A stretch of DNA of 64,000 nucleotides from Chrysemys picta bellii (taxonomy: Eukaryota), in NCBI RefSeq assembly GCF_011386835.1, contig NC_088810.1, positions 19,654,001 to 19,718,000 on the forward strand. The letters run 5' to 3'. The notes beneath the pieces are model-generated. The model had not been told where the DNA came from. It did not search any database and saw only the letters and a list, made by a program, of their open reading frames with translations. Shown piece after piece: positions 3,857 through 64,000 of this stretch (position 1 is the stretch's first letter; every line of letters begins with the position of its first letter). The translations under genes and the position numbers were made by a program.

Positions 3857-3857
3857 T

Positions 3858-3888
<31 letters not shown>
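3857..3888. repeat. (TG)12(CG)4 microsatellite in GNRHR2 intron 2
   Basis: Read directly from the sequence. Confidence 0.95.
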
Positions 3889-3889
<1 letters not shown>

Positions 3890-9357: not shown

Positions 9358-9789
<432 letters not shown>

Positions 9790-10173: not shown

Positions 10174-10251
10174 ATCTCTGAGGCCCAGGTTCATCCCCAT
10201 CTTGTTCCACGCTGTCATAGTCCTCACGTACTCTGGCCCTCGAACCTTCCT
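10174..10251 (-). CDS. RBM8A: RBM8A exon 3
   Basis: [25 protein letters not shown]; ccag| acceptor and |GTGAGT donor; 78 nt. Confidence 0.96.
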
Positions 10252-10866: not shown

Positions 10867-10926
10867 CTGAACCAAACCCTCGGCCTTTCCTCTTCTTTGC
10901 TTTCTCCTTCAGTTTGTGGATGCTTT
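10867..10926 (-). CDS. RBM8A: RBM8A exon 2
   Basis: (E)SIHKLKEKAKKRKGRGFGS; gcag| acceptor and |GTGAAG donor; 60 nt; not in the ORF track. Confidence 0.95.
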
Positions 10927-11084
10927 CTGCGGAGAAGTTCAATGTGTTAATTTCAACTGGAAGGAGGTCTGAAACAGGCCATTTGTGGTAGAAGGGGGAG
11001 GGGGTGTCAATGTTATCGGATCAGAACCAGGCTCGACCCAGATGGTGCAAGTTTCAGAACAACCCCAAGGCAGGGACAAACTTG

Positions 11085-12300: not shown

Positions 12301-12344
12301 TGGGGGGCGGGGCTCGGCCCGGTGTCTGCCCGGGCCCCCATTAC

Positions 12345-12411
12345 CGTCCCCATCCTCGTCCATGGCGAAGTCCTCGCCGCCCGCCTCGTGAAGGTCCAGC
12401 ACGTCCGCCAT
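12345..12411 (-). CDS. RBM8A: RBM8A coding exon 1
   Basis: aagATGG context; MADVLDLHEAGGEDFAMDEDGD; 67 nt then |GTAATG. Exons sum to 525 nt = 174 aa. Confidence 0.97.
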
Positions 12412-12720
12412 CTTGCCCACCGTGCGACTGACTGCACCGCAGCTGCCGCTGCTAGGGCGGGCGCAGAGGGAACGGGAAGCCGGCGGGGCCGGGACCGCGC
12501 TGCACGCCGGGAAGCGGGGCGGAAGTTCCGCTCCAATCATAAGTGAATAGCGAGGGGGCCGCCATCTTGGGAAGGGCACGCTTTTTTTCCTCCGCCCGCG
12601 GGCACCATTTTGGTAGAGTCACGTGGCCTCCCCCTCCCCAGCTGGGGAGACGCCATCTTGGGAAGGTCCATAATTCTCGCCCCTGTGTGGTCGCCATCTT
12701 GAGAAGGGCAGGAGGCAGGG
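12400..12720 (-). promoter_or_regulatory. RBM8A CpG-island promoter with YY1, ETS and CCAAT motifs
   Basis: CGCCATCTTG at about 12406, 12560, 12651 and 12692, variant ACCATTTTG at about 12604; CGGAAGT at about 12520; CCAAT at about 12533. Confidence 0.75.
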
Positions 12721-25876: not shown

Positions 25877-27538
25877 TAACAGGAAACCTGAGATTTGAGC
25901 AAGGAATCTTGGAACACCCAGAAAATGTAACATCTGTGACTTGATGCTCTGGGCAGATTTCCTCATGCATACTTCCACAGACTTCTGTGTGAACTATGAT
26001 GGCTTATATTTTCATGAATCATAGAAATATAGGGCTGGAAGAGACCTCAAGAGGCCATTTACTCCATTCCCTTGTGCTGAGGCAGGATTAAGTAGACCTA
26101 GAACATCCCTAATAGGTGTTTCTCCAACCAGTTCTTAAAAGCCTCCAAGTTGATCTAGTGCAAGGGACCAGTGACCATTTCAATGTCTTTTGGACCACCA
26201 GGATCATCACTGAAGTCCGGCAATACCAGCTTTCCAAGAGCTACACCGTAGTATTTTCCTAGTTTCAGTAGTTGATGAGGTAACGGGTCTTCGAGGTCAC
26301 ACTTTGCATGCCTGTTGTATCTTGTACTTGTTGACTAGCATATTAGCCAGTCACCTCATAGGATCTAGGCAAATTTTGACCATGATTTCAATGCAAATGG
26401 TTTCATGCTCTTGGCACAAGACAGGGGACTGAATTTGACTTCCAAGTCCCTTCCAGCGCTACATTTCTATGATGATATGCTCTCTTTCGGTAGCATTTAG
26501 GATTGTAAGATTGTTTCATGGTTCACAGAGTAGTTTGGGTTCCATTAGGTGCTATCTGAATGCACAGTAAAAACTCATTCTGACCAAGTAGGATTTTGGC
26601 ACTAGGAAATTTAACATGCCTACCACCAAGGATATAAACAGGTACGGCTTTGTAATGCATCTGGCTTAAATAACGAGGCTGCACACAATAACAGGCTGAT
26701 CAGAGAAGCTCCACACCCCAAGAGTTCATCAGGCTTGAACACTGCAGGCTCAATAATGGAACGGAGTTGATCTTGCTCCAGGCCCGGTGAGCACCAGGAA
26801 GTCAGACACCGTTTTTGAAACAGCAAGGTGCAGTTATCGGTTACATTTTGATGGGGGCAGTGCCTTGAAAAATCTTAACAATATCCCCCCACCCCCATGC
26901 AGTTAGAGAAACTTTTTTGATGCTTTCTGGTCTAATTAGTCTTGTTTTTCAGAGGCTATCCCTATAAAAGTACACAGGATCCCAGATAGGTGGCAACCTT
27001 ATATTGACTGTAATATCTACGGCAGAGAAGTCACCATGTAATAAAATGCTCCTGTTTTTAAATCACATGCTCCACTTTTGTGTCATCAAGCCCTATTACA
27101 ATGAATTAGGGGAAGATTTTCAAAAGCTCTAAGGGATTTAGAGCACAAATCCCCTTGAAAGTTAATGGAGCTGGTGCCTAGTTCCCTTAGGATCCTTTGA
27201 CAATCCCATCTTGCAGGCATTCCAAGTAATACCACATGGAACCCACTATATTCCAGCAAGTTATTATACACCTTTATCTTCTGCAGAAGAAAAAGAAGAG
27301 AGACTATCTAGCCAACCTTTCGGGTTACTGGTAGTACCAGACATGGGTAGGCATTGAGTAAGCCAATCTTTCATTTTAGCTCACATAAAAGCAGTTCTAT
27401 ACAAGAGAGACATTTTTATATTTAAAAGAAACTTGGCCAGAATTGTAGGAAAGGGTGTGAAGTGCTTCTCCTGGAAGTGGAATAAGTTTGGAGTTAACAG
27501 GCCCTCAACAGTGGGAATGCTGAAAACATTAAGGACTA

Positions 27539-28048
<510 letters not shown>

Positions 28049-29064
28049 TCAGTTAAGGCCGACACACTCCAAAGTTCTCCCCGCGTATACGAAATGGCTG
28101 TTAAGTGGCAGTTGTTGTGAAGTGCTGGAAAGCTATTTTCTCAGACATCCTGAAGTCATTAGGAGTGTGTTTTTAAACCACAGCAAGCCCAGCCATACTG
28201 AAGGCAAAAAATTAAACTGGAAGTTGAAGTCAGCACATATTATGTGGACATGGAAATACCACCAACTGGATTGCCAACAAAATTAATTATCTTAAAACCA
28301 AAACACAGCCAGCCTTCTCTAAACACGAGGGCTACGCTGCAGGATGGGGAGGCAGTTCAGCTGCTGGAATTGTTTCTTTTGGATGCCTTCTTCAAACCAA
28401 GACTAGAGCATAACTCGGCCTTAAGCCACTGCAGGAAAGGAATCCGAAATGCAATCAGGACCCTGTGTGATTTTTGGACTTTAATCTTTCTGGTTAAGTA
28501 TTTGGGATTGGACCTTTTCCTTCGCAACAAAGGAAAGGCAGCGGCTATTGATCAAGCCTTATTAGTTTGGCTGCCAAACTTTTTTCTGAGCATCTTGGGA
28601 AGAGACACTGGGTCGAATTCAGAGCTGTATTAGGGATTGAAACGCTACTGAAGTTCATGGACTCTAGAATTCACACTGTAACCGTACTCAACTACTTAAC
28701 CCTGTGAAGAAGAAGGCATTTAACTTAAGGCAAATATTGCTATACAACAGTTATGCTAACACTTGCCAATTGCCTTAGATGCCATGTCTGCAACCTCACT
28801 ATTTGCAGAATCCCTATTAATTCCCTGCAGTGAGTATGTAATCCTGGGGTAACATAGCTAAAGCAAATCTCAAGCTAAAGACAACCACTGCACTTACCAT
28901 GTTGAACTAAGTTGGGTTGGATTTATCCCTCTACTATGGGTCCGGATCCATCTGTGCTTTGGGGCTCCCAGAAAATCTCCAGCACCCACCCCTCACAGCG
29001 AGGAATTTGATTCCATTAGAATGGGGACTTGAGGGAATTGATAGACTCCCCTCAGCCAGTTCTA

Positions 29065-29316
<252 letters not shown>

Positions 29317-29709
29317 TTAAGGACGCATATCAGGGAGAGAAATGGTCTTTTCATACCGCAAAAACTGAGCGCAGGAAACGGAGCCTGAGAAACTGGTTTT
29401 ACTGCTCCCCACTTGTGATTGCCGGTCTACAGAAACGGAGAGTCACTTGCACATTAACACCCATTGAGCTGTACCAATATGACAGCAGGGTCCCTCCCCA
29501 TGGAGCTGACAGTCCAATTCTGAGAATGGTCAACTTCAAGCAGAATTGTAGGTGCTCAGCACCTCTAGACCCAAGGTCTAATCTTGAGACACAACAGTCT
29601 AAACATACAGTGAGTGAGTTAAAAGGCAAGGCTTTTGGTAGTGAAATTTTTTCCTCTTAGAGAAAGCTGGTGGGGTGTGGGGTGGGAAGACCGAAAGGCT
29701 CTTGGAAGA

Positions 29710-29788
29710 GAAGTGGGCTGTAGTCCACGAAAGCTTATGCTCTAATAAATTTGTTAGTCTCTAAGGTGCCACAAGTACTCCTGTTCTT
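29710..29788 (+). mobile_element. Penelope-like terminal fragment (subfamily A)
   Basis: gaagtgggctgtagtccacgaaagcttatgctctaataaatttgttagtctctaaggtgccacaagtactcctgttctt. Confidence 0.75.
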
Positions 29789-32550
29789 ATTTTAAAGAAG
29801 GGATCTGAGTTAATAAGGGAAGAAATCAGCAATGTCTTTTTTCTAAAGGCAATCTATATTGGTAGTGATGTGTTTGCCCCTTGCTTGGGCCAATCAGCTG
29901 GGCTGTCAGTGTCCGGAATCTGACTGGATGCGATTCTTCAGACATTTAAGACCACAAAAGATTCTGCAGTGTTCAAGTGGCACGGTGCGGCAGGTGGCAG
30001 GGCTAATTAGAGCCAATAATAACCACACTGACCTGCCCTGGCACTAAGATGCCCAATAGAGATCACCTGTCCTTAAGTCAGACATTTCATGTCCAGTTTG
30101 AGATGGTCACGGTTTTATGGAGCGGCACAGAGGGCTCATTCAGAAAAGGCGTGGGCTGCCCAATTCAATCCTTCCCTAATTCCACTGACATTTGGGTGGG
30201 AATGGAGAGGCCTCGTTTATGAATCATGACGGTCTTTCTGAATGGGAGGAGGTATAATTGAATGGTGAATCACATACTAAAATAAGGAATATCATTTTTA
30301 GTAGAAGTGTTTTGTTTTTTCCCCCCATTCATGTCAGGAAGCCAGAGTCCAAAGCATTAACCCTGGCTTACTTTGGCAATTATGGTCCTTTCAGGATAAG
30401 AGCCAGTCTTTAACAGTCTTCTAGATGTTCCTTAAATAAGTAGAACATTTGCTATCCTAGATTCAAGCAGATATCCCGCCTCTGCCTGAGGACAATACCC
30501 CAATGCTTCAGGGAAGGCAAAAATCCCACTACGCACCCAACTAACTGTGCAGGGCTGCACATGGTGGAAAGATTGCTTCCGAACCTCTGTGGTGATAAGC
30601 GTGTGGCCAGAAGCATGAGATTCAATCACGCTTATCTTTGCATACGTGCAGGAATTACAAACATTATTCAGGATTCCCTGCAGCTATTTCACGTGCTGTG
30701 AGGGAAGAAGCATTTCCTTTTATTTGTTCTAAATTTATCTGCCCTTAACATTAGAGCAATTCCTCCTGCCACTGGAGGGATCCCACAGCTTCCATCAAAA
30801 TCCTGAGTCTGAAAATTCTCTCTAAGCTACTTTCTACACTAAATAGTTCTACGTTTTTGCGATATCTAGTTCTAGGAAAATCCTCTCCTAATCCATCTTC
30901 GTTATCCTTCTCTGGGCCTTTTCCAACCTCAGTTATCACTTTGAAATGAAGCAATGTACAAAATGAATTAGAGTAACATTTTGCGAACAAAAGAATGCTA
31001 CTGGAAAGAAGAGTTAGGCCCTTCCATGCGGAATCCTGCTAGAGAGTTATTCCGATTTCTTTTACAGAAAGACAGAACAAGCAAGAGGACTCCCCTGCTT
31101 ACAGAAATCCCCCCATGGGAATATGACAAGACGGAAGATCAGTTTGGTGACACAAAGAGTACCACGCTAGGTACTTCAAGCTATCCAGCTAAACATTTTA
31201 TTGGCCCACACACTGTACTGTAAGTAACACTTTAGGTTTTCAGCCATGCAGTTTTCAGGATAAGAGAACTAGCTTTATCTTATTGCCTCTAAAGTTATTA
31301 CTTTCATTAGCTTCCTGTAGAATGGAACCAACAAGATAGTTACCCGAAGTTTCTTACTAAAACATTTTGCCCGCCTGCCTCAGATGCAGTGTTTCAGGGA
31401 GTTAGTTAATAACGAGCACTTGGCTTGGATCACCTTCAAGTTTGGGGTATGGATTTTTCCTCAAACACACAACATGGGGGCAGTTTTAAACCCGAGAGTC
31501 ACAGGGAAACGTACACAATCTATGTGGTTCCTGGCCAGCGCTACAGCACACCAGCCAGAGCACGGAATTCAAACATGGGCAAGCAGATTCCCTTTCTACT
31601 GACAAGATAAATCATGCATATAATCCCCACGGGGAGACAGAGACAATGCCTTATTCAACAAACAGTTTGACACCCCGTTTGGCACAGGGCAACTGAATCT
31701 TTGCAGCTATCACCGAATACCAGCAACTTCGCAAATGAAAAACTGAAATTAAGCCACATCAAGCAGCATGAAAAGGCTGAAATCACCCCCCCTCGTTATT
31801 ATGAACATTCAAAACAATAAAAAGTTTGTTAATTTAGTTAAGACAAGAAACGGGATGCTGAGCGCCTAAGTGGAGGTAACAAGGAGACCATGTTTAGCCA
31901 GCGCGTGGGACTTGAGTTCTCAGTGAGAGACAAGCTCCTTTCTATGTTACACACTGCTTATTTGTTTTGCAGGGTGCTTTGTTAGCGACTGCTGGAGCAT
32001 TAGGTCTGGCAGCTGAGGGAGTATCCAAGAGGTTCTCTCTCAAGGACTGAAATCGGTGCTTCCAGCCCAACAGAGAATGGGGGCGATTTAAAAAGAGAGA
32101 GGAGAGAGTTAAACAAGTAACTGGAACTCGGCAAAGATACTTTAAAGAAAAAAACTGCAAGAGAAACTCAACAAGCCTGGTTGCTGTGAATGGAAAAAAA
32201 GACTAAAAAAAAATAATAGTATCAGAGCTTATGGTATTTCTTGAATAGTCTGTCTTTTCCCTTTCAGCAGTTACAGCTGAATAGCGCTAGGCCACACCAC
32301 CATGCATATTTATCAGGTAATAAGTGCTTAGCGAGTGGAGTGATCTTTCAGCCAATCGGACGGCAAAGAGCATTTGTTCACAGCGGCATACGGATTCTGG
32401 GGGGGGAAGACAACTTCCATCTTGTATTTGTTCTGGGTAGCAATCTTCAGCTCTTTGCCGGACTAGAGTTCTCAAAACGCAATCACCGATTCACCCCCAT
32501 CCTCCCAAAGAGGCCGTGCTTGAAATGGATGGATTCATATTGTTCAGAGT

Positions 32551-32674
32551 TAGGGTGACCAGATGTCCCGATTTTATAGGGACAGTCCTGATTTTGGGGT
32601 CTTTTTCTTAGATAGGCTCCTATTACCCCCCCACCCCCGTCCTGATTTTTCACATTTGCTGTCTGGTCGCCCTA
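32551..32674. mobile_element. hAT MITE
   Basis: TIRs TAGGGTGACCAGA / TCTGGTCGCCCTA; perfect 8-bp TSD ttcagagt; second copy at 56915. Confidence 0.85.
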
Positions 32675-34598
32675 TTCAGAGTTCTGCTGCTGCCATGTGA
32701 ATTAACAGGAGGAGGAGTGGGGAGACGGGAAAAATCAAAAGCCACAAGGGAAGAGGACTGGAGGTTCTGATCCAAACAGGATGTAAAATAACATCTGTTT
32801 TGCAAGCCAGAAGTTGGATGCGTATTTTGGCTGTGACCCTTTGAGAAACAACTGAAGATATTGAGTTGTCCAGTTTTCCATTAAAATATTAAAACTGTTA
32901 TGAGCAGGCCCAACCCTGCTCACAACATCTGATGACTAGGTTCGACCTGGAAACGTGTCATTAAGATCAACTTTTTGAAGACTCCTAGTGGCAGCCAGAA
33001 TACTACAGAAAAAGTAGTCATCTGAGACACTGCTTGACTGGGAGAGAGGGCCAACTGAATCAAATGGTACATTCATTTAGTGCGGAAATGATGGGTTGTT
33101 ATTAGCGCAAGGGACCACGTTAGGACAACTCAGTTATATTTGCTGCTGACTTGTTGTAAGACCCTGGAGGGTTGTTTTTGATCTATGCCTCAGTTTCCCT
33201 ATCTCTAACCAGAGATGTCACCAGGAGGTTGCCAGGTTTATTTTAATATTTAAAGTGCCCTAAGATCCTATTGGACTAGTAGTGAGAGAGCATATACATG
33301 GCTCTTTACAACCTTAGGACATGTTCCCACCCCCAGAACAGTTTATCGTATAAGTGAGACTGTGAAGCAAAGCAGAGCACTTGGGGTTTGAGAAGATACA
33401 AGAGTCTTGAAACGAAAAGGGAAGAAGATTGTTGGGATTTGACAGAACAGAGGGGCCGCGAGGCAGATGATGTATCAACTTCCATCTTGCATACAAGACA
33501 CCAGTATTTAGCCAAAGGAATTTTAACACATTTGAGAACTGCAGCCACTGGGTCAACAAGCTCTAACATTGACACTGGCAGCAAGTGGTCCAATCAAAAT
33601 CCCTGTTCAGCATTTATGACCATCACCCGTGAGGGAATGGGAAATGCCACGCACACATGCCCCCCATCCAGAGAAAAGCACTGAATCTACAGAGTACTAC
33701 ATGGAGCGAAAGCTTTTCTCCCTTTTCAAAACTTAACCCGTAGAAAAGCAGCAATTCCCACTTCGTTTTGTTACTTAAAGCCAGGCCAGGAAGAGATGTA
33801 GCCCAGTCACACATATATAGAGTGCTTTGGCCATCAGTCATATCAATTGTTTATTGCCTTGGAGCGTAGACCCCGGTCCCTGTATTGTGTATATGATAGC
33901 ACATCTGACTCGCATATTAAATAAGGAAGAATAAGTGATTCCACATGGTGCTGAAATGCTTCCAATGCATTCAACTCACATAACGTCTGCCAAGCATTTA
34001 TCAGTTAGGATGTGTACAACTGCATCTACTGGACCTGCCGCCACAACCGGAACTCGGGAACTCAAAACAGTTGCAGAGCATCTCCAGATGGGTGGGGAGA
34101 AGGATACTTTCCACCTTTGTGCCAGTAAAATCTGAGGTTTAATCCTCTTTACTGCTTCCACATTTCTTAAGAGGACCAGGTGGGATGTGCAGGAGACTCA
34201 GATTTGAGGCTTCCCTGGAGTGCTCTCATATGAATTGGGAGCATCTGAGGCAATACTTGGAGTCCTCGGGACGGGGTGTGGTTTAGTTAACACTCCCACA
34301 GCAGCCCACTTTAGTGCAGACATACAGTCTGAGGAGCTAGTCACTTCTTCCACTCACTGTTAGTGGTGAAAAGAACCGCCTGTAGCGGCAGGTAAGCTGA
34401 GCAGGGAGAGGGATGTTATGGAAAATACAGTCACTTAGAATGCAAGCAGGAGGGTGGGAAAAAAGGAAACCATCAGTATGCCCAGCAAAACACCCTTCAT
34501 AGCTGCCTGGTGGGTGTGAAAGAGCCTTTTGTCAGGCACTAACCAGAGAGTAAAGGTCTCATACACATGCTTAGGACCCAACCATTAACACACACAGA

Positions 34599-34766
34599 CA
34601 GGGCCGCCCAGAAGATTCAGGGGGCCTGGGGAAAAGCAATTTCGGGGGCCCCTTCCATAAAAAAAAAGTTGCAATACTATAGAATACTGTATTCTCGTGG
34701 GGGCCCCTGCAGGGCCCGGAGTCTGGGGCAAATTGCCCCACTTGCCCCTCCTCCCGGGCGGCCCTG
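34599..34766. mobile_element. hAT MITE
   Basis: TIRs CAGGGCCGCCC / GGGCGGCCCTG; perfect 8-bp TSD cacacaga. Confidence 0.85.
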
Positions 34767-35989
34767 CACACAGAGCTGTCAAACAAAACCTTACTCCTCT
34801 GATAAGGAGATTAGTAACTGGCGTACATTTATGCAGCAAGTTACAGAAGCACCATGAGTTTGAAACCTTCCCATCTTCAAACAGAATAAAGAATTGTTCC
34901 AGATCCTACACCTAACCCCCCTCCCCAACATTCCTGCCCCCCTGCCAGTCTTATAGTGACATTTACCTATTTTCTCCAGGCCTAAGTTTTCAAAGACTAG
35001 TGATTTCAATTGACCAACCTGAGACACATTAAAGGGACTCGATTTTCAGACACCAGATGGCTCAGCACTGTGTGAAATACAGGCCCTTTTAGGTGTCTCC
35101 GGCTGAGCACCCAGGCAACCCCCAAGTGAAAACAAAGGACAGGGGGAAAGAGTGCAACTGACATGATGCAAAGTATTATCAACTGCAGGAGGTGAAACAG
35201 AATGATCAGCTGTTTGCCGCAAGAGCTGTCCATTACCCTGATCTTCGGGACCACTTGTAACAAGAGAAAGGTTTTTTATTTATTTTTTAAAGAGACATTA
35301 TAAGAGAAGAGCAAACACATTAGCAATGTCTTCTGCTCACTTCCAATCCCCTAGTTCACCTCTGCCACATACATACATACATACATCCCTGAGTGTAAGG
35401 GCATCCCCAGCCCCTGGAGCCCCCCCGTTAGAAGTCAGGATGGAGTAGCAGGTCTCCTTCCTCACCTTTACTATATCCCCAAGTACAGGGAGTCCCCCCT
35501 CTGAAGGGCCGGCAGAGTGGGGGGGTCTCCCAGCTCCCCCCCTCTCACTTCAATAGTCACACTGCTTGCGGGGGACGGGGCCCACTCCCCAGGACAAGGT
35601 AGCCCCGCGGTGTGGGGTAGGAGATCCCGGCTCCAGCCGCTTCCCGGATCCATGTAATGGGCCTGGGGATCCCCAGTGTGTTTGTGGGGGGCTAGTCGGG
35701 ATCCCAGTCCTTGGGGCAGGGGGACGGTCCCCCCCCCACCCAGCCGGGCCCTAGTGCGGTGTACAAGGGGTTTAGCCCCCCAGGGTTGGGGGAGAGCTCA
35801 GATGGGGAGTGCCACTCACCGCAGCAGAGACCCCCGGCTCGGCCACAGCCCCGAGGGAGGGTCTCCATCGCCGGGGGGGGGGGTCCCAGCCCCCCTCCCG
35901 CAGCCCGGCTCCATCGCCGGGGGGGGGGTCCCTCGCACGGCGGGTGCCGGTCACCGGGGCGGGAAGGGGGGTCCCCCCGGTGCCCCTCA

Positions 35990-36358
<369 letters not shown>

Positions 36359-38863: not shown

Positions 38864-39736
38864 ATAGAATCATAGAAGATCAGGGTTGGAAGGGACCTCA
38901 GGAGGTCATCTAGTCCAACACCCTGCTCAAAGCAGGACCAACACCGACTAAATCATTCCAGCCAAGGCTTTGTCAAGTCTGACCTTAAAAACCTCTAAGG
39001 AAGGAGATTCCACCACCTTCCTAGGTAACCCATTCCAGTGCTTCACCACCCTTCTAGTGAAAAAGTTTTTCCTAATATCCAACCTAAACCTCCCCCACTG
39101 CAACTTGAGACCATTACTCCTTGTTCTGTCATCTGGTACCACTGAGAACAGTCTAGATCCATCCTCTTTGGAACCCCCTTTCAGGTAGTTGAAAGCAGCT
39201 GTCAAATCCCCCCTCATTCTTCTCTTCTGCAGACTAAACAATCCCAGTTTCCTCAGCCTCTCCTCGTAAGTCATGTGCTCCAGCCCCCTAATCATTTTTG
39301 TTGCCCTCCGCTGGACTCTTTCCAATTTTTCCACATCCTTCTTGTAGTGTGGGGCCCAAAACTGGACACAGTACTCCAGATGAGGCCTCACCAATGTCGA
39401 ATAGAGGGGAATGATCACATCCCTCGATCTGCTGGCAATGCCCCTACTTATACAGCCCAAAATGCCATTAGCCTTCTTGGCAACAAGGGCACACTGTCGA
39501 CTTATATCCAGCTTCTCGTCCACTGTAACCCCTAGGTCCTTTTCTGCAGAACCGCTGCCTAGCCACTCGGTCCCTAGTCTGTAGCAGTGCATGGGATTCT
39601 TCTGTCCTAAGTGCAGGACTCTGCACTTGTCGTTGTTGAACCTCATCAGATTTCTTTTGGCCCAATCCTCTAATTTGTCTAGGTCCCTCTGTATCCTATC
39701 CCTACCCTCCAGCCTATCTACCACTCCTCCCAGTTT
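38864..39736 (-). mobile_element. 5'-truncated CR1 LINE (ORF2 C-terminus, 3' UTR and ATTCTATG-type tail)
   Basis: Uninterrupted KLGGVVD...LHLG...[11 protein letters not shown]...[11 protein letters not shown]-like...LDKALAGMI* frame (38948-39736); terminal ...cttctatgattctat. Confidence 0.95.
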
Positions 39737-40159
39737 AGGGAGTAAATTATTTACATTTAACTGTAAGGGTGTTATCATTTCCTCTGGGGGAGAAGTAAAG
39801 GGGACACAGATGTATTGTCTTGCGGGAGTTACACAGATGAGTCCCTGGCCATTGAGGGGTGCAAGGGGAGGCAGGGTGCTGAGTTATGAGGGGATTGGGG
39901 GTGCTGGGAGGTCATTGGGGGAAGAAGAGGTGCTGGATTGGGTGGACTGGAGGAGGGGGCGCTGATTTGGGGGACTGGGAGATACGAGCTAGGGGAAGGG
40001 GGCTCTGGTCCTGTCTGTAACAACAGGCAGGGAGCAGGCAGAGAAGGGGTGCGGGCCGGGGGCTACAGGGAGAACCGCTGCTGCCCTTCCTCTGCTGGGC
40101 TCTAGGGGGCGCAGCCATATCGCGTTGGGTGGTTTCTCCACGTTTGACCCCTGGGCGCC

Positions 40160-40200
40160 ACCGTTGCATTCCCGGAAGTGGTTGCAACCGTCTCGCCTGT
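40160..40200 (+). promoter_or_regulatory. Probable PEX11B core promoter (ETS site in a CpG island)
   Basis: CCGGAAGT at 40172-40179, flanked by an inverted GTTGCA/TGCAAC pair; CpG-rich; no ATG from 40141 to the PEX11B start at 40815. Confidence 0.5.
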
Positions 40201-40302
40201 GACCGGAGGGGACTTCAACACCCCCTCCCCTCAGGAACGGAGCGACCCGTCCTCCCCCGGCTTAGACTCCTGGACTAGAAGGCCGAGGGTGGGGGGGCCT
40301 CC

Positions 40303-40725
40303 GGCGGAGCTGCACCAGGAGGCCCAAGGAACCCCCCACCCGGTGGAGCTGCACCAGGAGGCCCAAGGCGGAGGGGCGCCAGGCGGAGCTGCCCCGGGAG
40401 GCCCAAGGCGGAGGGGCGCCTGGCGGAGCTGCACCGGGAGGCCCAAGGCGGAGGGGCGCCTGGCGGAGCTGCACCGGGAGGCCCAAGGCGGAGGGGCGCC
40501 TGGCGGAGCTGCACCGGGAGGCCCAAGGCGGAGGGGCGCCAGGCAGAGCTGCACCAGGAGGCCCAAGGAACCCCCGACCCGGTGGAGCTGCACCAGGAGG
40601 CCCAAGGCGGAGGGGCGCCAGGCAGAGCTGCACCGGGAGGCCCAAGGAACCCCCGACCCGGTGGAGCTGCCCCGGGAGGCCCAAGGCGGAGGGGCGCCAG
40701 GCGGAGCTGCCCCGGGAGGCCCAGG
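40303..40725. repeat. GC-rich 40-bp minisatellite, about 11 copies, two unit variants
   Basis: GCCCAAGG recurs at about 40322, 40361, 40401, 40441, 40481, 40521, 40561, 40600, 40640 and 40679; variant A ...GGCGGAGGGGCGCC, variant B ...GAACCCCCGACCC. Confidence 0.95.
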
Positions 40726-40814
40726 GGAGGAGGGTGAGGACCCTGTAATCAGCTCACCCAGGAAGGCACGAAGACCTTGGGCCCGGCTGTGCCTGGAGGA
40801 GGAGCACCAGCACC

Positions 40815-40870
40815 ATGGATTTCTGGGTGCAGTTCAGTGCCCAGAGCCAAGCCAAGGAGCGGGTTTTCAG
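40815..40870 (+). CDS. PEX11B: Peroxisomal biogenesis factor 11 beta, coding exon 1
   Basis: caccATGG Kozak; MDFWVQFSAQSQAKERVF(R); 56 nt; AG|GTGTGG donor. Confidence 0.92.
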
Positions 40871-42619
40871 GTGTGGTATCAGCCCAGCAAAATATGGGGG
40901 GGAAGTCTGGGGCTTCACAAGCCAAGGGTTGCCGGTGAGTAGCGGGTTGCCCCTGCGCCAGAGGGAAGGGATTGAGGTGACCCCAGGTGAATCCGTGCCC
41001 TGAGTTGCTGGCTTTGTTGGATCATCCCGGGAATGGTACCGAATTCAGTTGCCAGGGCCTGTGAAATTCCATTGGGACATCAGTGTCGAAACAGTCACCT
41101 GTTGCTGCAAATGTGCCACTAGCGTTAGGCCTGGTCTGCAGTGAAAGGTGTTGCTGGCCTACCTGTATCAGGAGTGTGTGTGTGTGGGGGGGGAACCGCA
41201 TGCTGAACCCACCTAACTATGCCAGTAAAAGACTCTGTGTAGATTTAGTTACAGTGGCAAAAAAAGTCCTTTTGGGTATGTCTATGCAGCCTGCAGCCGC
41301 AAGCCTCCCAGCCTGGATCAACAGACTTGAGGTTGTGTGTGTGTGTGTGTGCGCGCGCTAGGACTCTGAAAAAGCTGTGTAGACCGTGCTTTGTAGTTGC
41401 ATCTCAAGCTGTGAAGCCTAGGGGTGAGAGTGGGCTTCAGAGCCCATGCTCCAGCCTGAATGTCAAAGCCTGTCAGCACAGCTGTTTTCAGGGTGCTGGC
41501 ATGAACTCCTCACACTTGAGTCTGTTGATCTGGGCTGGAAAGCTCCCTGTTGCAAGCTGCATAGACATTCCCTTTGTCAGCACAGCTTGTTTCATTCAGG
41601 AAACGAGTATAAGCTATACCAGCAAATAATCTTTTTTGCCAGTATAAGTTATGTCTCCAGGAGGAAGGTGAGCCAGCAAACCCTTTCTAGCCTAGACAAG
41701 GCGTCAGTCCCTGCGGAATCCTAATCACTTGCTGTTTTTGTTGGCTCACCAGAACGGTTGGCTTCTGCCTTCTTTCCCCAACCCTTGTGATTTTCAAGGA
41801 TTTTGCAGGGTGACTAAGAAGCCCAGAAATATTTTCAGGGCTGAGGTTTGTGCGGGACAGAGGCAAATTTGCCTGTATGATAATCAACAGGTGTCTTGGG
41901 AATTTGGCCAGACCAATAGTCCCGTCTAAGGACTTGTCTGCACAAAAAGTTGTTACCACTTGAACTGTCCTAGTATGGTAAACATATACAACCACTGTAG
42001 TGTGGGCACTTATGCTAGTATAGCTTATTTCCCCGTCTCATAAGGCCCTTTAAAACAGTGTAACTGCATCCACTCTGGGGATTGTCCTGATATAACTTTC
42101 TGTTAAAAACCACACTCCTAACCAACAGTTATACTGGTACAACAACCTATGTGTTGACCAGGCCTAAGTCTGGTTTCCCCAGTGCCCATGGCATCTTATG
42201 GTAAATGTCCCAGGGAATGGCATGTGCCAAATTATCCTCTGGGCTTGTGGGAAAGACTTTCCTTCTGGACTCCCAGCTCATGCCCTGAAGAATGAGACTC
42301 AATAGATGAAATTTTACCATAGCTACAAATCTTTGAGATCAGCACCTAATATTTAAAAAAAGAAACTTGAGTTGTTTGGCTGGTGGGGGAAAAAGCAACA
42401 AAACCACCAAACCTACGGGAGTGTTGCTAAACCTATGCAGGTTGGCATCCTCTTATTTGAAATCCCTTTATATTGAAAATAAAAATAAGAGTTAAAAATG
42501 TATCCGTGATAAGTGTTAAGTCTGTGTAATTGATTTTTGTGTGTGTTGAGAGGCTGACCGAGAATATTTGTCCTTGAAGGGGAGGTTAGTGGGGGAATGA
42601 GACTTGCTTTGCTTTAGAC

Positions 42620-49164: not shown

Positions 49165-49449
49165 GTAAGTGAAATCATCTTCTCAGAGGGGATGTAATGG
49201 GAGGCTTCCAGGGTCTCTGAACAAGAGAAACCCAGTTCTTCCTACCCCGCTAATTACCTTTGGTTGTAGTTTTGTGCCACAATGCTGGATGGGGGTGGTC
49301 TGTGGCCCCGCAGCTTGGCGTGGAAGGCTGGAGGGATGTGTCAGTTATCCCAGATCCCTGGCCCATTTGGCATCAGTGATGTGCTTAGTAGTGACATAAC
49401 AGCAGGGAGTGTCTGGCTGATACTTCGTTCGACCCGCTTGATGTTCCAG

Positions 49450-49651
49450 TGTTCCGGCTGGGGAACTCGGCGGACGCCCTGGAGTCGGCGAAGCGAGCCA
49501 TCCACCTCTCGGATGTGGTCTTGCGCTTCTGCATCACCGTCAGCAACCTGAACCGAGCCATGTACTTCGCCTGCGACAACATCCTGTGGGCGGGGAAGTC
49601 TGGCCTCCTCCCTCACATGGACCAGGAAAAGTGGAGTCAGCGGTCCTTCAG
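49450..49651 (+). CDS. PEX11B: PEX11B exon 3
   Basis: (L)[51 protein letters not shown]...QEKWSQRSF(R); 202 nt. Confidence 0.96.
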
Positions 49652-51006
49652 GTGAGGCTGGGCTAGTGCCGTTTGCTTTTCCTGGTCAGGGATGATCCTG
49701 TCAGGTAAGTGTGTGTGTGTGGGGGGAGTTTCCGACAAATCCTTGCGAACAATAGCTGTGTTGCAACAGAAATAGCTCTGCCTTTTCCCTGCTCCCTATC
49801 ACTTTCCAACCCAAAGCACCTTGCTAACCTTGCATACAGGTTGCCCAGCACTGAACTGCAGCTACCTCTGGGGTGGCCCACAGGAACGGTTCAACAGCCC
49901 ACAGGAACGGTTCAACAGCCCGCAGGAACTCTGTGCTGCGGCTCATTGAAGCATAGCCGTAGAAATTCCTTGGGAAGTGCTAATAGGCAGAATATAAAGC
50001 CCTAGTTTTGAATTTGCATAAGGCAATGGCGTTAGCACCCCTACGCTTGCAAGAAAAAATGGCCAGGGCTCTTTATTAGCAGTAGTGATACTATTGAACA
50101 CAGCCGATTGTGTCTGCAGATCTCGGGGCTGCACAGAAATGGGGAAGTATCGTTTTCTGTGCTTTTACACACGAGGAAACCGAGACACAGAGCAGCTCAC
50201 CCTTCCCCCCCGGACACACAGCAAGGTTGTGGCAGCCCTTAGAATAGAACCAGGATCTGGTGCTGCGTCCCGTGCACTGAACTGTGTTGCTTCTGACATC
50301 CACACAGTGTCAGTGAGCTCAGTTTAACACCCCACATGTCAGGCTGGGTGAATGTGAATGTCTGGGACGGGGGGAATCTGCATTGGCCATATTGCCTTCC
50401 AATAAGGTGACGTGTCCTGTCACGCAGCTGACCCTCAGATGGGATTCTAGTAACACTTCCCTAGCATCCATCCAGAGATCCCAAAGCTCTTGACAGACAT
50501 GAAGCCTCCCACCCCCTGGAGAGGTAAGCGGTGCATCCGTCCAATAGCTGGCTAAAGCAAAGCACAGAGAGGTGACGGGACTCCTCCAAGGTCATTCCAG
50601 TAGAACCCAATCCACTGCTTTAGCCTTCAGTCACACGTCCAGCTAGGAGCTGGGAATAGAACCCAGGAGTCCTGGTGTCTCGACCTGTAGACTGGCCACT
50701 GAACAATACGTCCTACAGTTATATCCCGATGAAGATGCTTCGGTTCTGTCCACGCTGCCGTCGGGAGGTGCGATCGGAGCACGTGCGCACATGCCCAAGG
50801 TAGCTTTAATAGAGCCAAGTCTCATTCCAATGGCGGCATGGGCAGCGGCACAGGCTAGCCAGCACCCTGGGTATGTACTCAAGCGACCGCTGCCCATGCT
50901 GCTGCTGCTTCACTAGCTCTGTTAAAACTAGCTCAGGTGTGTCTGCACTTGCTGCAGTCACACACCCCAGCTGCGGTAACGTAGCTTTAGGGGGCCACCC
51001 TGCTCT

Positions 51007-51652
51007 TAGAATCATAGAAGATCAGGGTTGGAAGGGACCTCAGGAGGTCATCTAGTCCAACCCCCTGCTCAAAGCAGGACCAACCCCAACTAAATCATCC
51101 CAGCCAGGGCTCTGTCAAGCCTGACCTTAAAAACCTCTAAGGAAGGAGATTCCACCACCTCCCTAGGTAACCCATTCCAGTGCTTCACCGCCCTCCTAGG
51201 GAAATAGTGTTTCCTAATATCCAACCCAGACCTCCCCCACTGCAACTTGAGACCATTACTCCTTGTTCTGTCATCTGCCATCACTGAGAACAGTCGAGCT
51301 CCATCCTCTCTGGAACCCCCCTTCAGGTAATTGAAGGCTGCTATCAAATCCCCCCCCACCCTCGCTCGTCTCTTCTACAAACTAAATAACCCAGTTCCCT
51401 CAGCCTCTCCTCATAAGTCACGTGCCCCAGCCCCCTAATCATTTTCATTGTCCTCCGCTGGACTCTCTCCAATTTGCCCACATCCCTTCTGTAGTGGGGG
51501 GCCCAAAACTGGACGCAATTCTCCAAGTGTGGCCTCACCAGTGCCGAACAGAGGGGAATAATCACTTCCCTCGATCTGCTGGCAATCTCCTATGAATACA
51601 GCCCAATATGCCGTTGGCTTTCTTGGCAAGGAGGGCACGCTGCTGACTCATA
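51007..51652 (-). mobile_element. 5'-truncated CR1 LINE with frameshifts, in PEX11B intron 3
   Basis: Same family as 38864-39736; ORF2 is split across track ORFs 51090-51359, 51344-51565 and 51435-51638; tail tagaatcatagaa. Confidence 0.92.
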
Positions 51653-51744
51653 ACTCTTGTTGGAGTCAGTGGGAGTTTTGTCCCTTCAGTGGACAGTAAA
51701 TATTAGCTGATAAACCCTCTCTCCTTCCCCCTTCTGCCTTTCAG

Positions 51745-52111
51745 ATATTACTTCTTTGCACTGATCCTGAACCTGAGCCGGGATGCCTACGAGATCCGGC
51801 TCCTGATGGAGCGCGAGGCCTGCGGGAAGCGTGCGAAGGGCAGCGAGACCCGGCACGCGCTCCGAGCAGACACCAGTCTCCAGCAGCTGGTGTTGAGGCT
51901 GAAAGTCCAGCTGCACCTTCTTGTGCACGTGCTGAGGAGCAACCCCCCTCTGCTTGTGGACGTGGTGAAAAACGCCTGTGATATCTTCATCCCGCTGGAC
52001 AAGCTGGGGCTGTACAAGACCAACCCGGGCTTTGTGGGGCTGTGCGGGCTGACCTCCTCCATCCTCTCTATCCTCACCATCGTTCACCCCTGGCTCAAAC
52101 TTAAACCTTAA
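51745..52111 (+). CDS. PEX11B: PEX11B exon 4
   Basis: [21 protein letters not shown]...PLDKLGLY...[24 protein letters not shown]; the ...WLxLKP C-terminus is PEX11B-type. Spliced CDS is 741 nt = 246 aa. Confidence 0.95.
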
Positions 52112-60673: not shown

Positions 60674-61041
60674 TATGTGTGGGGTATATTTACACAGTAG
60701 CTTTCTGTGACCGAAGTGTTCATAAAGAGAAATCCCCTCAGTGAAATTGTGCCAACCTCCCTTGGTTTTCATCTAGAAGCCACACATTGCTCCCTGGATC
60801 CATTTGGAGCTGGGCTTTGATGGGGGACGCAAGATTATCTCGTTGACAAAAGTTGAGTTTCAAGCTTAGTACCTCCTTGGGCACCAGGTTCGTTTCCCGT
60901 GATGCCGCGTTCCCCATTTGGGGCTTTCTTCTTGGAGAACTTGGTCCTGAAAAGTATCAGAGGGGTAGCCGTGTTAGTCTGAATCTGTAAAAAGCAACAG
61001 AGGGTCCTGTGGCACCTTTGAGACTAACAGAAGTACTGGGA

Positions 61042-61082
61042 GCATAAGCTTTCGTGGGTAAGAACCTCACTTCTTCAGATGC
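61042..61082 (-). ncRNA. Mirror copy of the hammerhead motif
   Basis: Exact reverse complement of 61759-61799 in the left arm. Confidence 0.7.
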
Positions 61083-61758
61083 AAGTAATGGAAATCTCTA
61101 GAGGCAGGTATATATCAGTGTGGAGATAACGAGGTTAGTTCAATCAGGGAGGGTGAGGTGCTCTGCTAGCAGTTGAGGTGTGAACACCAAGGGAGGAGAA
61201 ACTGTTTCTGTAGTTGGATAGCCATTCACAGTCTTTGTTTAATCCTGATCTGATGGTGTCAAATTTGCAAATGAACTGGAGCTCAGCAGTTTCTCTTTGG
61301 AGTCTGGTCCTGAAGTTTTTTTGCTGTAAGATGGCTACCTTTACATCTGCTATTGTGTGGCCAGGGAGGTTGAAGTGTTCTCCTACAGGTTTTTGTATAT
61401 TGCCATTCCTGATATCTGAAGTCAGATATCAGGAATGGCAATATACAAAAACCTGTAGGAGAACACTTCAACCTCCCTGGCCACACAATAGCAGATGTAA
61501 AGGTAGCCATCTTACAGCAAAAAAACTTCAGGACCAGACTCCAAAGAGAAACTGCTGAGCTCCAGTTCATTTGCAAATTTGACACCATCAGATCAGGATT
61601 AAACAAAGACTGTGAATGGCTATCCAACTACAGAAACAGTTTCTCCTCCCTTGGTGTTCACACCTCAACTGCTAGCAGAGCACCTCACCCTCCCTGATTG
61701 AACTAACCTCGTTATCTCCACACTGATATATACCTGCCTCTAGAGATTTCCATTACTT

Positions 61759-61799
61759 GCATCTGAAGAAGTGAGGTTCTTACCCACGAAAGCTTATGC
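61759..61799 (+). ncRNA. Minimal type I hammerhead ribozyme motif (Penelope-associated)
   Basis: GCAT-CTGAAGA-A-GTG[aggttcttacc]CAC-GAAA-GCTT-ATGC: conserved core, GCAT/ATGC stem I, palindromic AGCT stem III. Confidence 0.7.
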
Positions 61800-61887
61800 T
61801 CCCAGTACTTCTGTTAGTCTCAAAGGTGCCACAGGACCCTCTGTTGCTTGGTCCTGAAAGACTCTTGAGTCTGGCTGTTGGGTTCCA

Positions 61888-61916
61888 CCCCCCCCCCCCC
61901 CCCCCCCCCCCCCCCC
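61888..61916. repeat. Poly-C tract (about 29 nt)
   Basis: Read directly from the sequence. Confidence 0.9.
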
Positions 61917-62488
61917 GCCCAAGCTGTTTAAAATTATGAATGTGGCCCTGGGCTAATCTGATCCAGTCTATTAATCCTCGTTGAGGCTGGAATTCCGCTC
62001 GACAATCGATTAAAGCCATCAAAGGTGAAGGGGTGGAGACTTCTCCAACATAAAAGGTGCTCAGTGGAAACTTTTCCCCCGCTGGTTGGTTTCTAGGGAG
62101 AAGAGCAGCTTCATCGTACTGCAGGACAGCTGGTGCCAGCGTTCTCCATTCCCCCATACTTGCTGAGTGGGAAGCATGGCTTTAAAGAATGTAAGTAGAT
62201 TTCATCATATTCATTCTCTTACCCCGGCCCATCAGATTCGGGCAGGCACGCGGGAGGTCGTGCCGCATAGACAATACATTTCTGCCTCTGGTTATGTTAA
62301 ATAGAAAGATTGCATGGATGCTCCCCGTGGAATTATTATTTATTAGGTGTATTATGGGAGTACCCGGGAGCACCATGCATGGCCAAGACTCCGTTGTGCT
62401 AGGCGCTGTATACAAACAAAGCAAAAAGCGGCCCCCAAGTTCTGCAGAACAATTTGTTCAGAAGACTTCGGGCCAGAACTTCAGAGGG

Positions 62489-62494
62489 TATAAA
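62489..62494 (+). promoter_or_regulatory. Tentative TATA box for the downstream perilipin-family gene
   Basis: TATAAA 1.36 kb upstream of the PAT exon, with a possible donor CAG|GTTGAG at 62583/62584. Motif evidence only. Confidence 0.25.
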
Positions 62495-62713
62495 TGACAA
62501 CAGCTGAACTGGCTTCAATGGCGATCTGTCAGTGTACACCAGCTGAGGATCGTCTGTGTCTGGGGTGGGTGGGCGAAAACCAGGTTGAGATCATCCCGCC
62601 ATCTGTGTCCGTGTAACCGGAGCGTGGTCTGGTTCATGAGGGGTCACCTGCCGCCAGTCTGAACTGAATGCAAAGGAAGGACTGAGAACTTCAGGAAGAG
62701 AAACAGCAGGGGC

Positions 62714-62741
<28 letters not shown>
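62714..62741. repeat. (GT)n microsatellite
   Basis: Read directly from the sequence. Confidence 0.95.
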
Positions 62742-62744
<3 letters not shown>

Positions 62745-63853
62745 TGGGGGGAGAGAACCTTACCTTGAGGTGCACTTCAAACAGAGCAGCGCAAAGCTTT
62801 GGGGTGGGGGAGAAGACCCCCTGGCGCCCTTCACTGAGAGAGAAAATGGACAGCGAGTCGCCTTTCTGCAAAGGTGGTCACAACCAGGCGTGGTTGAAAA
62901 TGCCGAAGAGTACACTGGGCGAGAGGGCCTGCAGTGACCTGGAGGGTGCGGTGTGAGAGGGGCTGATGCACAGTAGGCCTGGATAAGACTGCTTCGCCGA
63001 AGGGCAGGTGGGGATGAGGCTCCGCGCAGCCCTGGCTACAAACAACAAAAAGAGCAAAAAATCTTGCGGAGCAGCAGGGGTTTGAGCAGGCTGGGGCGGC
63101 GACTGTGATTTTTATCTCCTTGCCCTAATAATCTGAGGTACTAAGTCAGTGGGAGTCTTTCCGGATTAAGGGCTTCGGGATTTGTCCGCAACGGAGGAGA
63201 AAGGAACCGGACAAACGCAGGCAGCAGCGAGGAAACCAGTGCAAAGAATGTATTCAACAATGGGTGTAATCCTGACGCAGTTGCTGGAGTGGGTGGCACA
63301 TGTAGGCATGGCTCTGCACCTACAAACGAGTCCCTCGGAGAGACTCAGACAAGGAAGAGGTTTAAAACCAAAACAAAATATTAACGTCGTGTTTCCCCCA
63401 AGATCTCGCTGCCTGTCCATTCAGTTAAATGGCATTTGTAGAGCATGTGGGTCCGTCCTAGAGACTTAGGTAGGAGGCAGAGGTCAATAAAGAACTGCAC
63501 CACAACTATCAACGCAGCATTTCATCCAGGATCTAACTGCCGATACGTTCAGCTAAATAGAACTTGTTAGACTGCCTGCAACCTCCCAATAATCTTACGT
63601 TGTACTAGGTGGGTGGGGAGGGAGACTGCACAGGGCTTTGAAAGGGAGGACAAGGGGTTTGTCCTTGATGCACTAGAAGCCAGTGAAGGGGTTCCAGGAT
63701 GGCAGGGTGACTTTAAGGGCTGCGCTTAGCAGGTGGCATCATGCAGTTGGGTAGCTGCTGTTCAGGCCTGAAGGCGACGGCACTGAAAATGCTTCTGTAA
63801 AGATGCTCGCCAGCAAGCCAGACTCACGCGAGTCCCATTTTCCTCCTCCCTAG

Positions 63854-64000
63854 GGCAACACCTTGGCGCGCATAGCCAGTATCCCTCTGTTCAACTCGGC
63901 TTATCAGATCGCTGTGTTCACCTACACGGACATAAAAGGTGTCCACCCCGTGGTGGGTTTCTTCTGCGGCGTGGCAGAGCGCAGCGTGAGCACCGCGGTG
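63854..64000 (+). CDS. Perilipin-family gene, PAT-domain exon (runs off the window end; candidate PLIN6 orthologue)
   Basis: Polypyrimidine acceptor cccattttcctcctccctag|GGC; 49 open codons GNTLARIASIPLFNSAYQIAVFTYTDIKGVHPVVGFFCGVAERSVSTAV match the perilipin N-terminal pattern R-x3-LP-L-x2-S-x-Y...Y-x3-K-x2-HP...C-x2-AE-x2-V; phase-0 entry. Confidence 0.8.

What the first reader, a model, noticed from the sequence alone, without database searches (positions are those of the whole stretch)
63854..64000. Hidden perilipin exon beside PEX11B: candidate amniote PLIN6 (carotenoid-droplet perilipin)
Seen: a strong acceptor followed by 49 open codons with PAT hallmarks (RIASIPLFNSAY, YTDIKGVHP, CGVAERSV); it is absent from the ORF track. 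It differs markedly from PLIN1, PLIN2 and PLIN3 as I recall them. Known: human has no perilipin after PEX11B (ITGA10 follows); PLIN1 sits after PEX11A; zebrafish Plin6 coats carotenoid droplets in xanthophores and was described as a teleost-only clade dating to the early vertebrate duplications. Inference: this is the PEX11B-linked PLIN1 ohnologue, PLIN6, retained in turtles and lost in mammals, and a candidate gene for red/yellow carotenoid skin and shell pattern. I cannot confirm that it is unannotated or intact beyond the window, and I could not fix the upstream start exon.
Basis: partly seen in the sequence, partly recalled or inferred. Interest (0 to 1): 0.88.

Follow-up and report, generated by a model that had tools for sequence, protein, structure and literature searches.

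The report
Turtle PLIN6 gene beside PEX11B
The window ends inside a real, spliced perilipin gene that sits directly after PEX11B, in the same position as fish plin6 (the carotenoid-droplet perilipin published as fish-only), so turtles and frogs appear to have kept this gene, although databases call it "perilipin-2-like".

Summary
63854-64000 (+) is the first 147 nt of coding exon 2 of a perilipin gene (Pfam PF03036, E 1.9e-8).

The gene is not unannotated. At least 12 turtle species carry a 300-370 aa model, named "perilipin-2-like" or "Perilipin-2". Anuran frogs have a ~350 aa counterpart.

Orthology to fish plin6 rests mainly on position. The order PEX11B, perilipin, RERG-like GTPase holds in three turtles and a frog, and in arowana and bowfin, where the middle gene is plin6.

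Supporting evidence:
- Sizes of exons 2-5 match between tetrapods and fish.
- A C-terminal RRxS (PKA-type) site is shared.
- Trees place the turtle+frog clade outside PLIN2/3.
- Identity to mammalian PLIN1 is only 19-20%.

No PLIN1 or outgroup sequence could be fetched, so the tree is unrooted. It cannot by itself join the tetrapod and fish clades.

The turtle gene keeps its reading frame (no indels in 303 codons) but evolves fast (dN/dS 0.54-0.67). It lacks the fish 93-aa exon 6, and emydids have a premature stop that trims the tail.

A role in carotenoid droplets of xanthophores is inference only.

The scan's only other note on this stretch is a repeat of this same finding.

The parts
62176..62190 (+). 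Coding exon 1 of the perilipin gene: ATG plus four codons (MALKN), A at -3 and G at +4, GT donor at 62191-62192
   Evidence: The back-translated pattern for MALKN plus GT matches once in 64 kb, against 0 expected; sequence read. All turtle orthologues start MALKN or MAFQN. The annotated gene start of the related turtle locus L005 maps onto 62176.
62191..63853 (+). Intron 1 (1663 nt), GT...AG, phase 0
   Evidence: The same intron lies between exons 1 and 2 in L005, L002 and L006.
63854..64000 (+). First 147 nt of coding exon 2 (PAT domain N-terminus). By homology the exon is 199 nt and runs about 52 nt past the window end
   Evidence: Exon 2 is 198 nt plus a split codon in turtle, frog, arowana and bowfin. 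In likely-RNA runs, contigs start at 63854 or 63852 with 4 or 11 unmatched letters upstream.
49449..52111 (+). Last coding exons of PEX11B (ORFs 49449-49655 and 51806-52111, stop at about 52111), the upstream neighbour that defines the locus
   Evidence: Pfam PEX11, E 3e-17 and 1e-16. The neighbours are LIX1L, RBM8A and a GnRH-receptor-type 7TM gene. The gene is 69-91% identical to the PEX11 gene upstream of fish plin6 and of the frog gene, with the same PWLKLKP end.

Best explanation
This is exon 2, with exon 1 at 62176-62190, of the turtle orthologue of ray-finned-fish plin6. PLIN6 is the fourth vertebrate perilipin, linked to PEX11B in the way PLIN1 is linked to PEX11A. The gene has six coding exons. 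In related turtles it encodes a 304-371 aa protein made of an N-terminal PAT domain, an amphipathic helical (11-mer-type) region, a hydrophobic helix, and a disordered Ser/Pro/Arg-rich tail with a conserved RRxS site. Shown here: the gene is real, canonically spliced in relatives, present in likely-RNA runs, and keeps its frame across turtles. Inferred: like other perilipins it binds the monolayer of neutral-lipid droplets through the PAT and amphipathic helices. Like zebrafish Plin6, it most likely coats carotenoid droplets in xanthophores or erythrophores of skin, with PKA phosphorylation of the tail modulating droplet clustering. Compared with fish, the tetrapod form is trimmed: it lacks the 93-aa exon-6 segment and has 1-2 rather than 3-6 RRxS sites.
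For: Family: Pfam Perilipin for the exon and for full-length relatives, at 123-157 bits.

Position: PEX11, then perilipin, then a Ras/Roc GTPase on the opposite strand. This order holds in the turtles Platysternon, GCA_027887155.1 and Eretmochelys, in the frog Spea with LIX1 upstream, and in arowana and bowfin, where the middle gene is named perilipin 6. The fish PEX11 is 69-80% identical to the turtle PEX11B exons and has the same C-terminus.

Exon sizes: 198+, 84, 249-255 and 186-192 nt for exons 2-5 in turtle, frog, arowana and bowfin.

Trees: turtles plus frogs form one clade (97/89; 99 in a 120-row tree). This clade lies outside a PLIN2/3 clade (100/99), and no bird, squamate or mammal sequence falls inside it.

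Similarity: the profile-profile score of the tetrapod set against fish Plin6 is 276, against 251 for PLIN2/3. Identity to Swiss-Prot PLIN1 is 19-20%.

RRx[ST] in the tail: found in all 6 turtles, 5 of 7 frogs and all 11 fish Plin6, but in only 1 of 12 PLIN2/3.

Constraint: no indels in 303 codons, where flanking DNA predicts 10-16 (P at most 5e-5). dN/dS is 0.54-0.67, with p = 0.003 for one pair.

RNA: likely-RNA runs from two studies hold 75% of the exon's sampled words but only 20% of the words of exon plus intron. Two contigs begin at the acceptor.
Against: - No PLIN1 or invertebrate perilipin could be fetched. The tree has three unrooted groups and cannot show that the tetrapod and fish clades are sisters.
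- Pairwise similarity is ambiguous: frog proteins score slightly higher against PLIN2/3 than against fish Plin6.
- dN/dS is high for a perilipin.
- In emydids a CAG to TAG change cuts off the last ~50 aa.
- The fish exon-6 segment is absent.
- The tissue of the RNA runs is unknown. One contig includes 18 nt of intron, and depth is only 2-4.
- Lizards have xanthophores, yet no orthologue turned up in them.
- The AF2 model has low confidence (pLDDT 52).
Confidence: 0.8

Rival explanations
1. A tetrapod-specific perilipin paralogue, for example an old duplicate of PLIN1 or PLIN2/3 that landed next to PEX11B. On this reading it is not orthologous to fish plin6 and coats ordinary triglyceride droplets.
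For: The unrooted three-group tree does not join the tetrapod and fish clades. Frog proteins score as high against PLIN2/3 as against fish Plin6. The top Foldseek hits are PLIN1. The fish exon 6 is missing.
Against: It would need two independent insertions of a perilipin, on the same strand, between pex11b and the same RERG-like GTPase in fish and in tetrapods, plus reciprocal losses. Exon sizes and the tail RRxS site are shared. Identity to PLIN1 is only 19-20%. An unchecked scan note places PLIN1 beside PEX11A elsewhere in this genome.
Confidence: 0.08
2. A decaying or functionless gene in this turtle lineage: still transcribed and modelled, but under relaxed constraint and on the way to loss, as in other amniotes.
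For: dN/dS is 0.54-0.67 overall and 0.83 in the C-terminal third. Two of three pairs are not significantly below 1. Emydids carry a premature stop relative to other turtles. A perfect 428-nt inverted repeat is inserted about 330 nt upstream of the ATG in this window only. RNA depth is low.
Against: All six exons are intact, with GT-AG sites, in three turtle families. There are no indels in 303 codons where 10-16 are expected. Open models exist in at least 12 species, including side-necked and soft-shelled turtles. The window's 54 codons differ from the nearest relative by one synonymous and one non-synonymous change.
Confidence: 0.1
3. A chance open frame at the window edge that merely resembles a PAT motif.
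For: Only 49 codons are visible, and the Pfam score is barely above the cut-off.
Against: The peptide is 92-98% identical to annotated turtle proteins. The start exon matches. The locus is collinear with a related turtle genome at 96-98% nucleotide identity.
Confidence: 0.01

Closest known systems
Fish Plin6 (zebrafish zgc:162150; Granneman et al. 2017, eLife, PMC5342826)
   Same: The locus is the same: directly downstream of pex11b, on the same strand, followed by an RERG-like GTPase. Both have a PAT domain and an amphipathic region. Sizes of exons 2-5 match. The Pfam match stops at about profile position 250, so no recognised C-terminal four-helix bundle. Both have RRxS sites in a basic Ser-rich tail.
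   Different: The tetrapod protein is 300-370 aa rather than 460-490 aa. The 279-nt exon 6 (93 aa, hydrophobic) is absent. It has 1-2 RRxS sites rather than 3-6. Identity is about 31-36% in the N-terminal half. Expression and droplet targeting are unknown. The paper states that tetrapods lack plin6 and that it was lost in the lobe-fin lineage.
PLIN1
   Same: Both sit next to a PEX11 gene in the same orientation (for PLIN1 this is from general knowledge). Both have PKA-type sites in the C-terminal part. PLIN1 gives the longest Foldseek alignments.
   Different: Identity to human and rat PLIN1 is 19-20%. No PLIN1 appeared among the phmmer hits for the exon. The neighbour here is PEX11B, shown by the LIX1L/RBM8A context, not PEX11A.
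PLIN2 / PLIN3 / PLIN5
   Same: PAT domain and 11-mer region, with 24-30% identity in the N-terminal part. The databases name the turtle gene 'perilipin-2-like'.
   Different: It lies outside the PLIN2/3 clade (100/99). It lacks about 15 residues of the repeat region and the C-terminal bundle. PLIN2/3 have no tail RRxS site. The chromosomal neighbourhood is different.

Membership tests
Perilipin family (Pfam PF03036) | N-terminal PAT domain | tested here: met
   Window exon: E 1.9e-8, 34.2 bits against a cut-off of 33, profile positions 7-53.
Perilipin family (Pfam PF03036) | Amphipathic 11-mer-type helical region after the PAT domain | tested here: met
   This part lies beyond the window. In the nearest relative's protein (P0031) and in P0001, Pfam aligns residues 5-241 to profile positions 5-247 at 135-144 bits. 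AF2 predicts continuous helices over residues 8-262, at low confidence.
PLIN6 clade | Positional orthology: the gene lies between pex11b and the RERG-like GTPase | tested here: met
   Arowana and bowfin plin6; frog; three turtles; the window has PEX11B upstream; identity of the PEX11 gene.
PLIN6 clade | Groups with fish Plin6 to the exclusion of PLIN1-5 in a rooted tree | tested here: inconclusive
   It lies outside PLIN2/3 (100/99), but the tree has three unrooted groups and PLIN1 and outgroups were not obtainable. The hhalign score slightly favours fish Plin6, 276 against 251.
PLIN6 clade | Conserved PKA consensus sites in the C-terminal tail (three in zebrafish, per PMC5342826) | tested here: inconclusive
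   Turtles have one conserved RRxS site, frogs 0-2, fish 3-6 and PLIN2/3 essentially none. Phosphorylation itself was not tested.
PLIN6 clade | The roughly 93-aa hydrophobic segment encoded by fish exon 6 | tested here: not met
   It is absent from turtle and frog models. tblastn finds no credible, consistently placed match to it in their loci; the best E is 0.01, in one turtle on the opposite strand.
PLIN6 clade | Xanthophore expression and targeting to carotenoid droplets | not testable with these tools
   Runs are coded and give no tissue. The only evidence is low-depth contigs over the exon.
PLIN1 | Adjacent to PEX11A, with high identity to known PLIN1 | tested here: not met
   The neighbour is PEX11B, in the LIX1L/RBM8A/GnRH-receptor context. 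Identity to human and rat PLIN1 is 19-20%.

The most novel reading that the evidence does not exclude
PLIN6 was not lost at the base of the lobe-fin lineage. It survives in tetrapods that keep dermal chromatophores (turtles and anurans). There it would coat carotenoid droplets in xanthophores and erythrophores, making it a direct candidate gene for yellow and red skin and shell pattern. The loss of the fish exon-6 segment and of most PKA sites would track the loss of rapid carotenoid-droplet aggregation and dispersion in tetrapods.
Probability: 0.35. Interest if true: 0.72.

Novelty: new member of a known kind. Interest (0 to 1): 0.6.

Why it matters
[quoted passage not shown] In the library searched, no paper that mentions plin6 or perilipin 6 reports it in a tetrapod.

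A conserved orthologue in turtles and frogs changes the loss history of the perilipin family. It implies several separate losses in amniotes rather than one loss early in the lobe-fin lineage.

It also corrects a systematic misnaming ("perilipin-1/2/3-like"). And it gives turtle and frog colour genetics a specific, testable candidate for carotenoid storage.

Tried and rejected
- PDB sequence search with the exon found nothing.
- Word-based homologue searches were swamped. The search with P0001 returned only turtles. The mixed profile returned mostly sauropsid PLIN3-like proteins. The arowana Plin6 query returned only fish Plin6. None returned PLIN1 or an outgroup, so no rooted tree was possible.
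- Gene look-ups failed for Pelodiscus, gar and Carettochelys proteins, which are not on record.
- The coelacanth 102-aa 'perilipin-2-like' fragment could not be assigned. It is unresolved in the tree and equally similar to PLIN2/3 and to the turtle/frog group. I do not count it as PLIN6.
- Pairwise identities do not discriminate between the groups.
- The AF2 model is poor (pLDDT 52, pTM 0.21). The Foldseek result is used only for the names of hits and their percent identity.
- The ESM Atlas search gave only generic perilipin clusters.
- The bacterial-type promoter scan is irrelevant here and found nothing.
- I did not look up the name of the downstream GTPase, because that would have meant typing long sequences. 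Calling it RERG/RERGL-like rests on my own reading of its motifs.

Full report
**Observation.** The window ends in an exon. After a pyrimidine tract and an AG at 63852-63853, frame 1 is open for 49 codons to base 64000, and the other two frames hold stops. The peptide hits Pfam Perilipin (PF03036) at E 1.9e-8 on profile positions 7-53, which is the start of the PAT domain. The score is just above the family cut-off because only a fragment is visible. It is absent from the ORF list only because that tool drops ORFs that run off the end of the source.

**Context.** PEX11 exons lie upstream on the same strand, with the stop at about 52111. Further upstream I recognise three genes:
- a GnRH-receptor-type 7TM gene at 2003-4989 (+);
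- RBM8A at 9355-12579 (-);
- LIX1L at 27536-36358 (-).

These are read. Together they make up the PEX11B neighbourhood of human 1q21.1 (general knowledge), so the PEX11 gene is PEX11B, not PEX11A.

**Relatives and the start exon.** An exhaustive phmmer search of 1.84 billion representative proteins gave 24 hits. According to their source records, the identified hits are:
- a 352-aa Platysternon "Perilipin-2" at 92% identity;
- ten anuran proteins of about 350 aa, named perilipin-1-, -2- or -3-like;
- arowana "perilipin 6";
- a 102-aa coelacanth fragment;
- a few PLIN2/3-like sequences.

No PLIN1 was among them. A search at the 90%-identity cluster level found the same gene in at least 12 turtle species, mostly named "perilipin-2-like". 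So the gene is annotated but misnamed.

All turtle proteins start MALKN or MAFQN. The back-translated pattern plus GT matches once in the window, at 62176-62192, against 0 expected. The ATG has A at -3 and G at +4. The gene start of a related turtle locus (L005, GCA_027887155.1, 96-98% nucleotide identity to the window) maps onto this ATG. Intron 1 is therefore 62191-63853.

**Gene model beyond the window.** I mapped the proteins exactly onto their loci. This gives six coding exons with GT-AG introns in three turtle families and in the frog Spea. Exon 2 is 199 nt, so about 52 nt lie past base 64000.

Sizes of exons 2-5 are the same in turtle, frog, arowana and bowfin: 198+, 84, 249-255 and 186-192 nt. 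The two fish have one more exon, 279 nt or 93 aa. tblastn finds no credible, consistently placed match to it in the turtle or frog loci; the best E is 0.01, in one turtle on the opposite strand.

Pfam covers only profile positions of roughly 5-250 in both the tetrapod and the fish proteins. Neither group has the recognised C-terminal bundle.

**Orthology.** The strongest evidence is position.
- In arowana the order is PEX11(+), plin6(+), Ras/Roc GTPase(-).
- In bowfin it is PEX11, plin6, GTPase, CKS.
- In Spea it is LIX1(-), PEX11(+), perilipin(+), GTPase(-).
- In Platysternon, L005 and Eretmochelys the GTPase(-) follows the perilipin, and in L005 and Eretmochelys PEX11 is seen just upstream as well; in Platysternon the upstream flank shows no called gene.

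The fish PEX11 is 69-80% identical to the turtle PEX11B exons and ends in the same PWLKLKP. The GTPase last exons are clearly alike across the three groups. By its motifs I read this gene as RERG/RERGL-like; that is my own knowledge and was not looked up.

The paper that defined plin6 places zebrafish plin6 next to flad1 and syt11b and maps the region to human chromosome 1. This agrees with CKS (CKS1B, next to FLAD1 in human, from my own knowledge) lying beside bowfin plin6.

**Trees.** A careful ML tree of 45 proteins gives three groups:
- turtles plus frogs, 97/89;
- fish Plin6, 100/100;
- PLIN2/3-like, 100/99.

A 120-row tree keeps all 27 turtle and frog sequences in one clade (support 99), with no bird, squamate or mammal sequence inside it. 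The gene therefore does not nest in PLIN2/3/4/5.

Three unrooted groups cannot show which two are sisters, and I could not obtain PLIN1 or an outgroup. If the root lies on the PLIN2/3 branch, the remaining clade mirrors the species split between lobe-fins and ray-fins. Any other root needs an extra duplication and reciprocal losses at one and the same locus. This is a parsimony argument, not a test.

Other measures:
- hhalign slightly favours the fish Plin6 link: score 276 at 33% identity, against 251 at 28% for PLIN2/3.
- Raw pairwise identities are ambiguous, especially for frogs.
- Foldseek against Swiss-Prot models returns only perilipins, with 19-20% identity to PLIN1 and 20-30% to PLIN2/3/5. 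The gene is therefore not an orthologue of any mammalian perilipin.
- Two unchecked scan notes say the same genome has PLIN1 beside PEX11A, with an RERGL-like GTPase next to it. If true, the triplet PEX11, PLIN, GTPase is itself duplicated. I did not test this.

**Is it functional?** Among three turtle families the 303 shared codons align without a single indel. Flanking non-coding DNA shows 11-18 gap openings per kb, which predicts 10-16 indels in the coding sequence (P at most 5e-5). dN/dS is 0.54-0.67. It is significantly below 1 for one pair (p = 0.003) and marginal for the others. It is higher (0.83) in the C-terminal third. The gene is constrained but fast-evolving.

In L005, and in the equally 304-aa Chrysemys model, a CAG to TAG change ends the protein about 50 residues earlier than in other turtles. 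The downstream frame is still open and conserved. The conserved RRxS site is kept.

Likely-RNA runs from two studies hold 75% of the exon's sampled words but only 20% of the 501-nt stretch that includes the intron. Two contigs start at 63854 or 63852 with unmatched letters upstream, as expected for spliced RNA. One contig includes 18 nt of intron. Depth is 2-4 and the tissue is unknown.

**Mechanism.** Shown: the domain make-up and the tail motif. RRx[ST] occurs in the tail of all 6 turtles, 5 of 7 frogs and all 11 fish Plin6, but in only 1 of 12 PLIN2/3.

From the literature (PMC5342826): zebrafish Plin6 coats carotenoid droplets in xanthophores. It is phosphorylated when PKA is activated. 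It is needed to concentrate carotenoids and to cluster the droplets.

Inferred: the turtle protein binds neutral-lipid droplets through its PAT and amphipathic helices and does the same job in xanthophores or erythrophores. The simpler tail may reflect less dynamic pigment movement. I put the orthology at about 0.8 and the pigment role at about 0.35-0.4.

**Novelty.** In the library searched, no paper that mentions plin6 or perilipin 6 reports it in a tetrapod. The defining paper says tetrapods lack it. The gene models already exist, so this is a new member of a known kind and a correction of names and of the loss history, not a new kind of gene.

Noticed in passing
window 60992-61849: A perfect 428-nt inverted repeat (100% complementary, 2-nt spacer) ends about 330 nt upstream of the perilipin ATG. 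It lies in a ~950-nt stretch (60953-61902) that is missing at this place in the related turtle loci L005 and L002. Very high RNA-contig depth here shows it is repeat-derived. It may be a recent foldback insertion or an assembly artefact.
   Followed up: partly
L005:47117-47119 (compare L002 and L006 last exons): In the emydid-like relative a CAG to TAG change ends the protein at 304 aa, while other turtles read on for 48-67 more residues. The downstream frame is still open and conserved, so the stop looks recent. Chrysemys has the same 304-aa form.
   Followed up: partly
L001:31806-32876, L003:29282-30755, L002:59722-61110, L004:22170-23457 (all on the minus strand): A small GTPase of about 220 aa lies tail-to-tail with the perilipin in arowana, bowfin, frog and turtles. 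It has an unusual G1 motif (GAENVGKS) and DS..PQ in place of DTAGQ. It looks RERG/RERGL-like and has no obvious counterpart next to human PEX11B.
   Followed up: partly
window 2003-4989 (+): Three open exons of a GnRH-receptor-type GPCR (Pfam 7tm_1), apparently intact. This is probably the type-II GnRH receptor, which is disrupted in humans.
   Followed up: no
window 40178-40942: A GC-rich tandem repeat with open frames on both strands (units such as ...ELHQEAQGGGAPGGAAPGGPRRRGA...), lying between LIX1L and PEX11B. It may belong to a CpG island.
   Followed up: no
window 38948-39778 (-) and 51090-51565 (-): CR1-type LINE ORF2 C-terminal fragments (…[30 protein letters not shown]). One lies inside a PEX11B intron. 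Pfam gave no hit for the first.
   Followed up: no
L004:189-943 and L004:5024-5778: In bowfin the last pex11b exons occur twice with identical translations about 4.8 kb apart, upstream of plin6. This is either a tandem duplication or an assembly duplication.
   Followed up: no
window 61886-61917: A homopolymer run of roughly 32 C, broken by a single G near its end, at the edge of the window-specific insertion.
   Followed up: no
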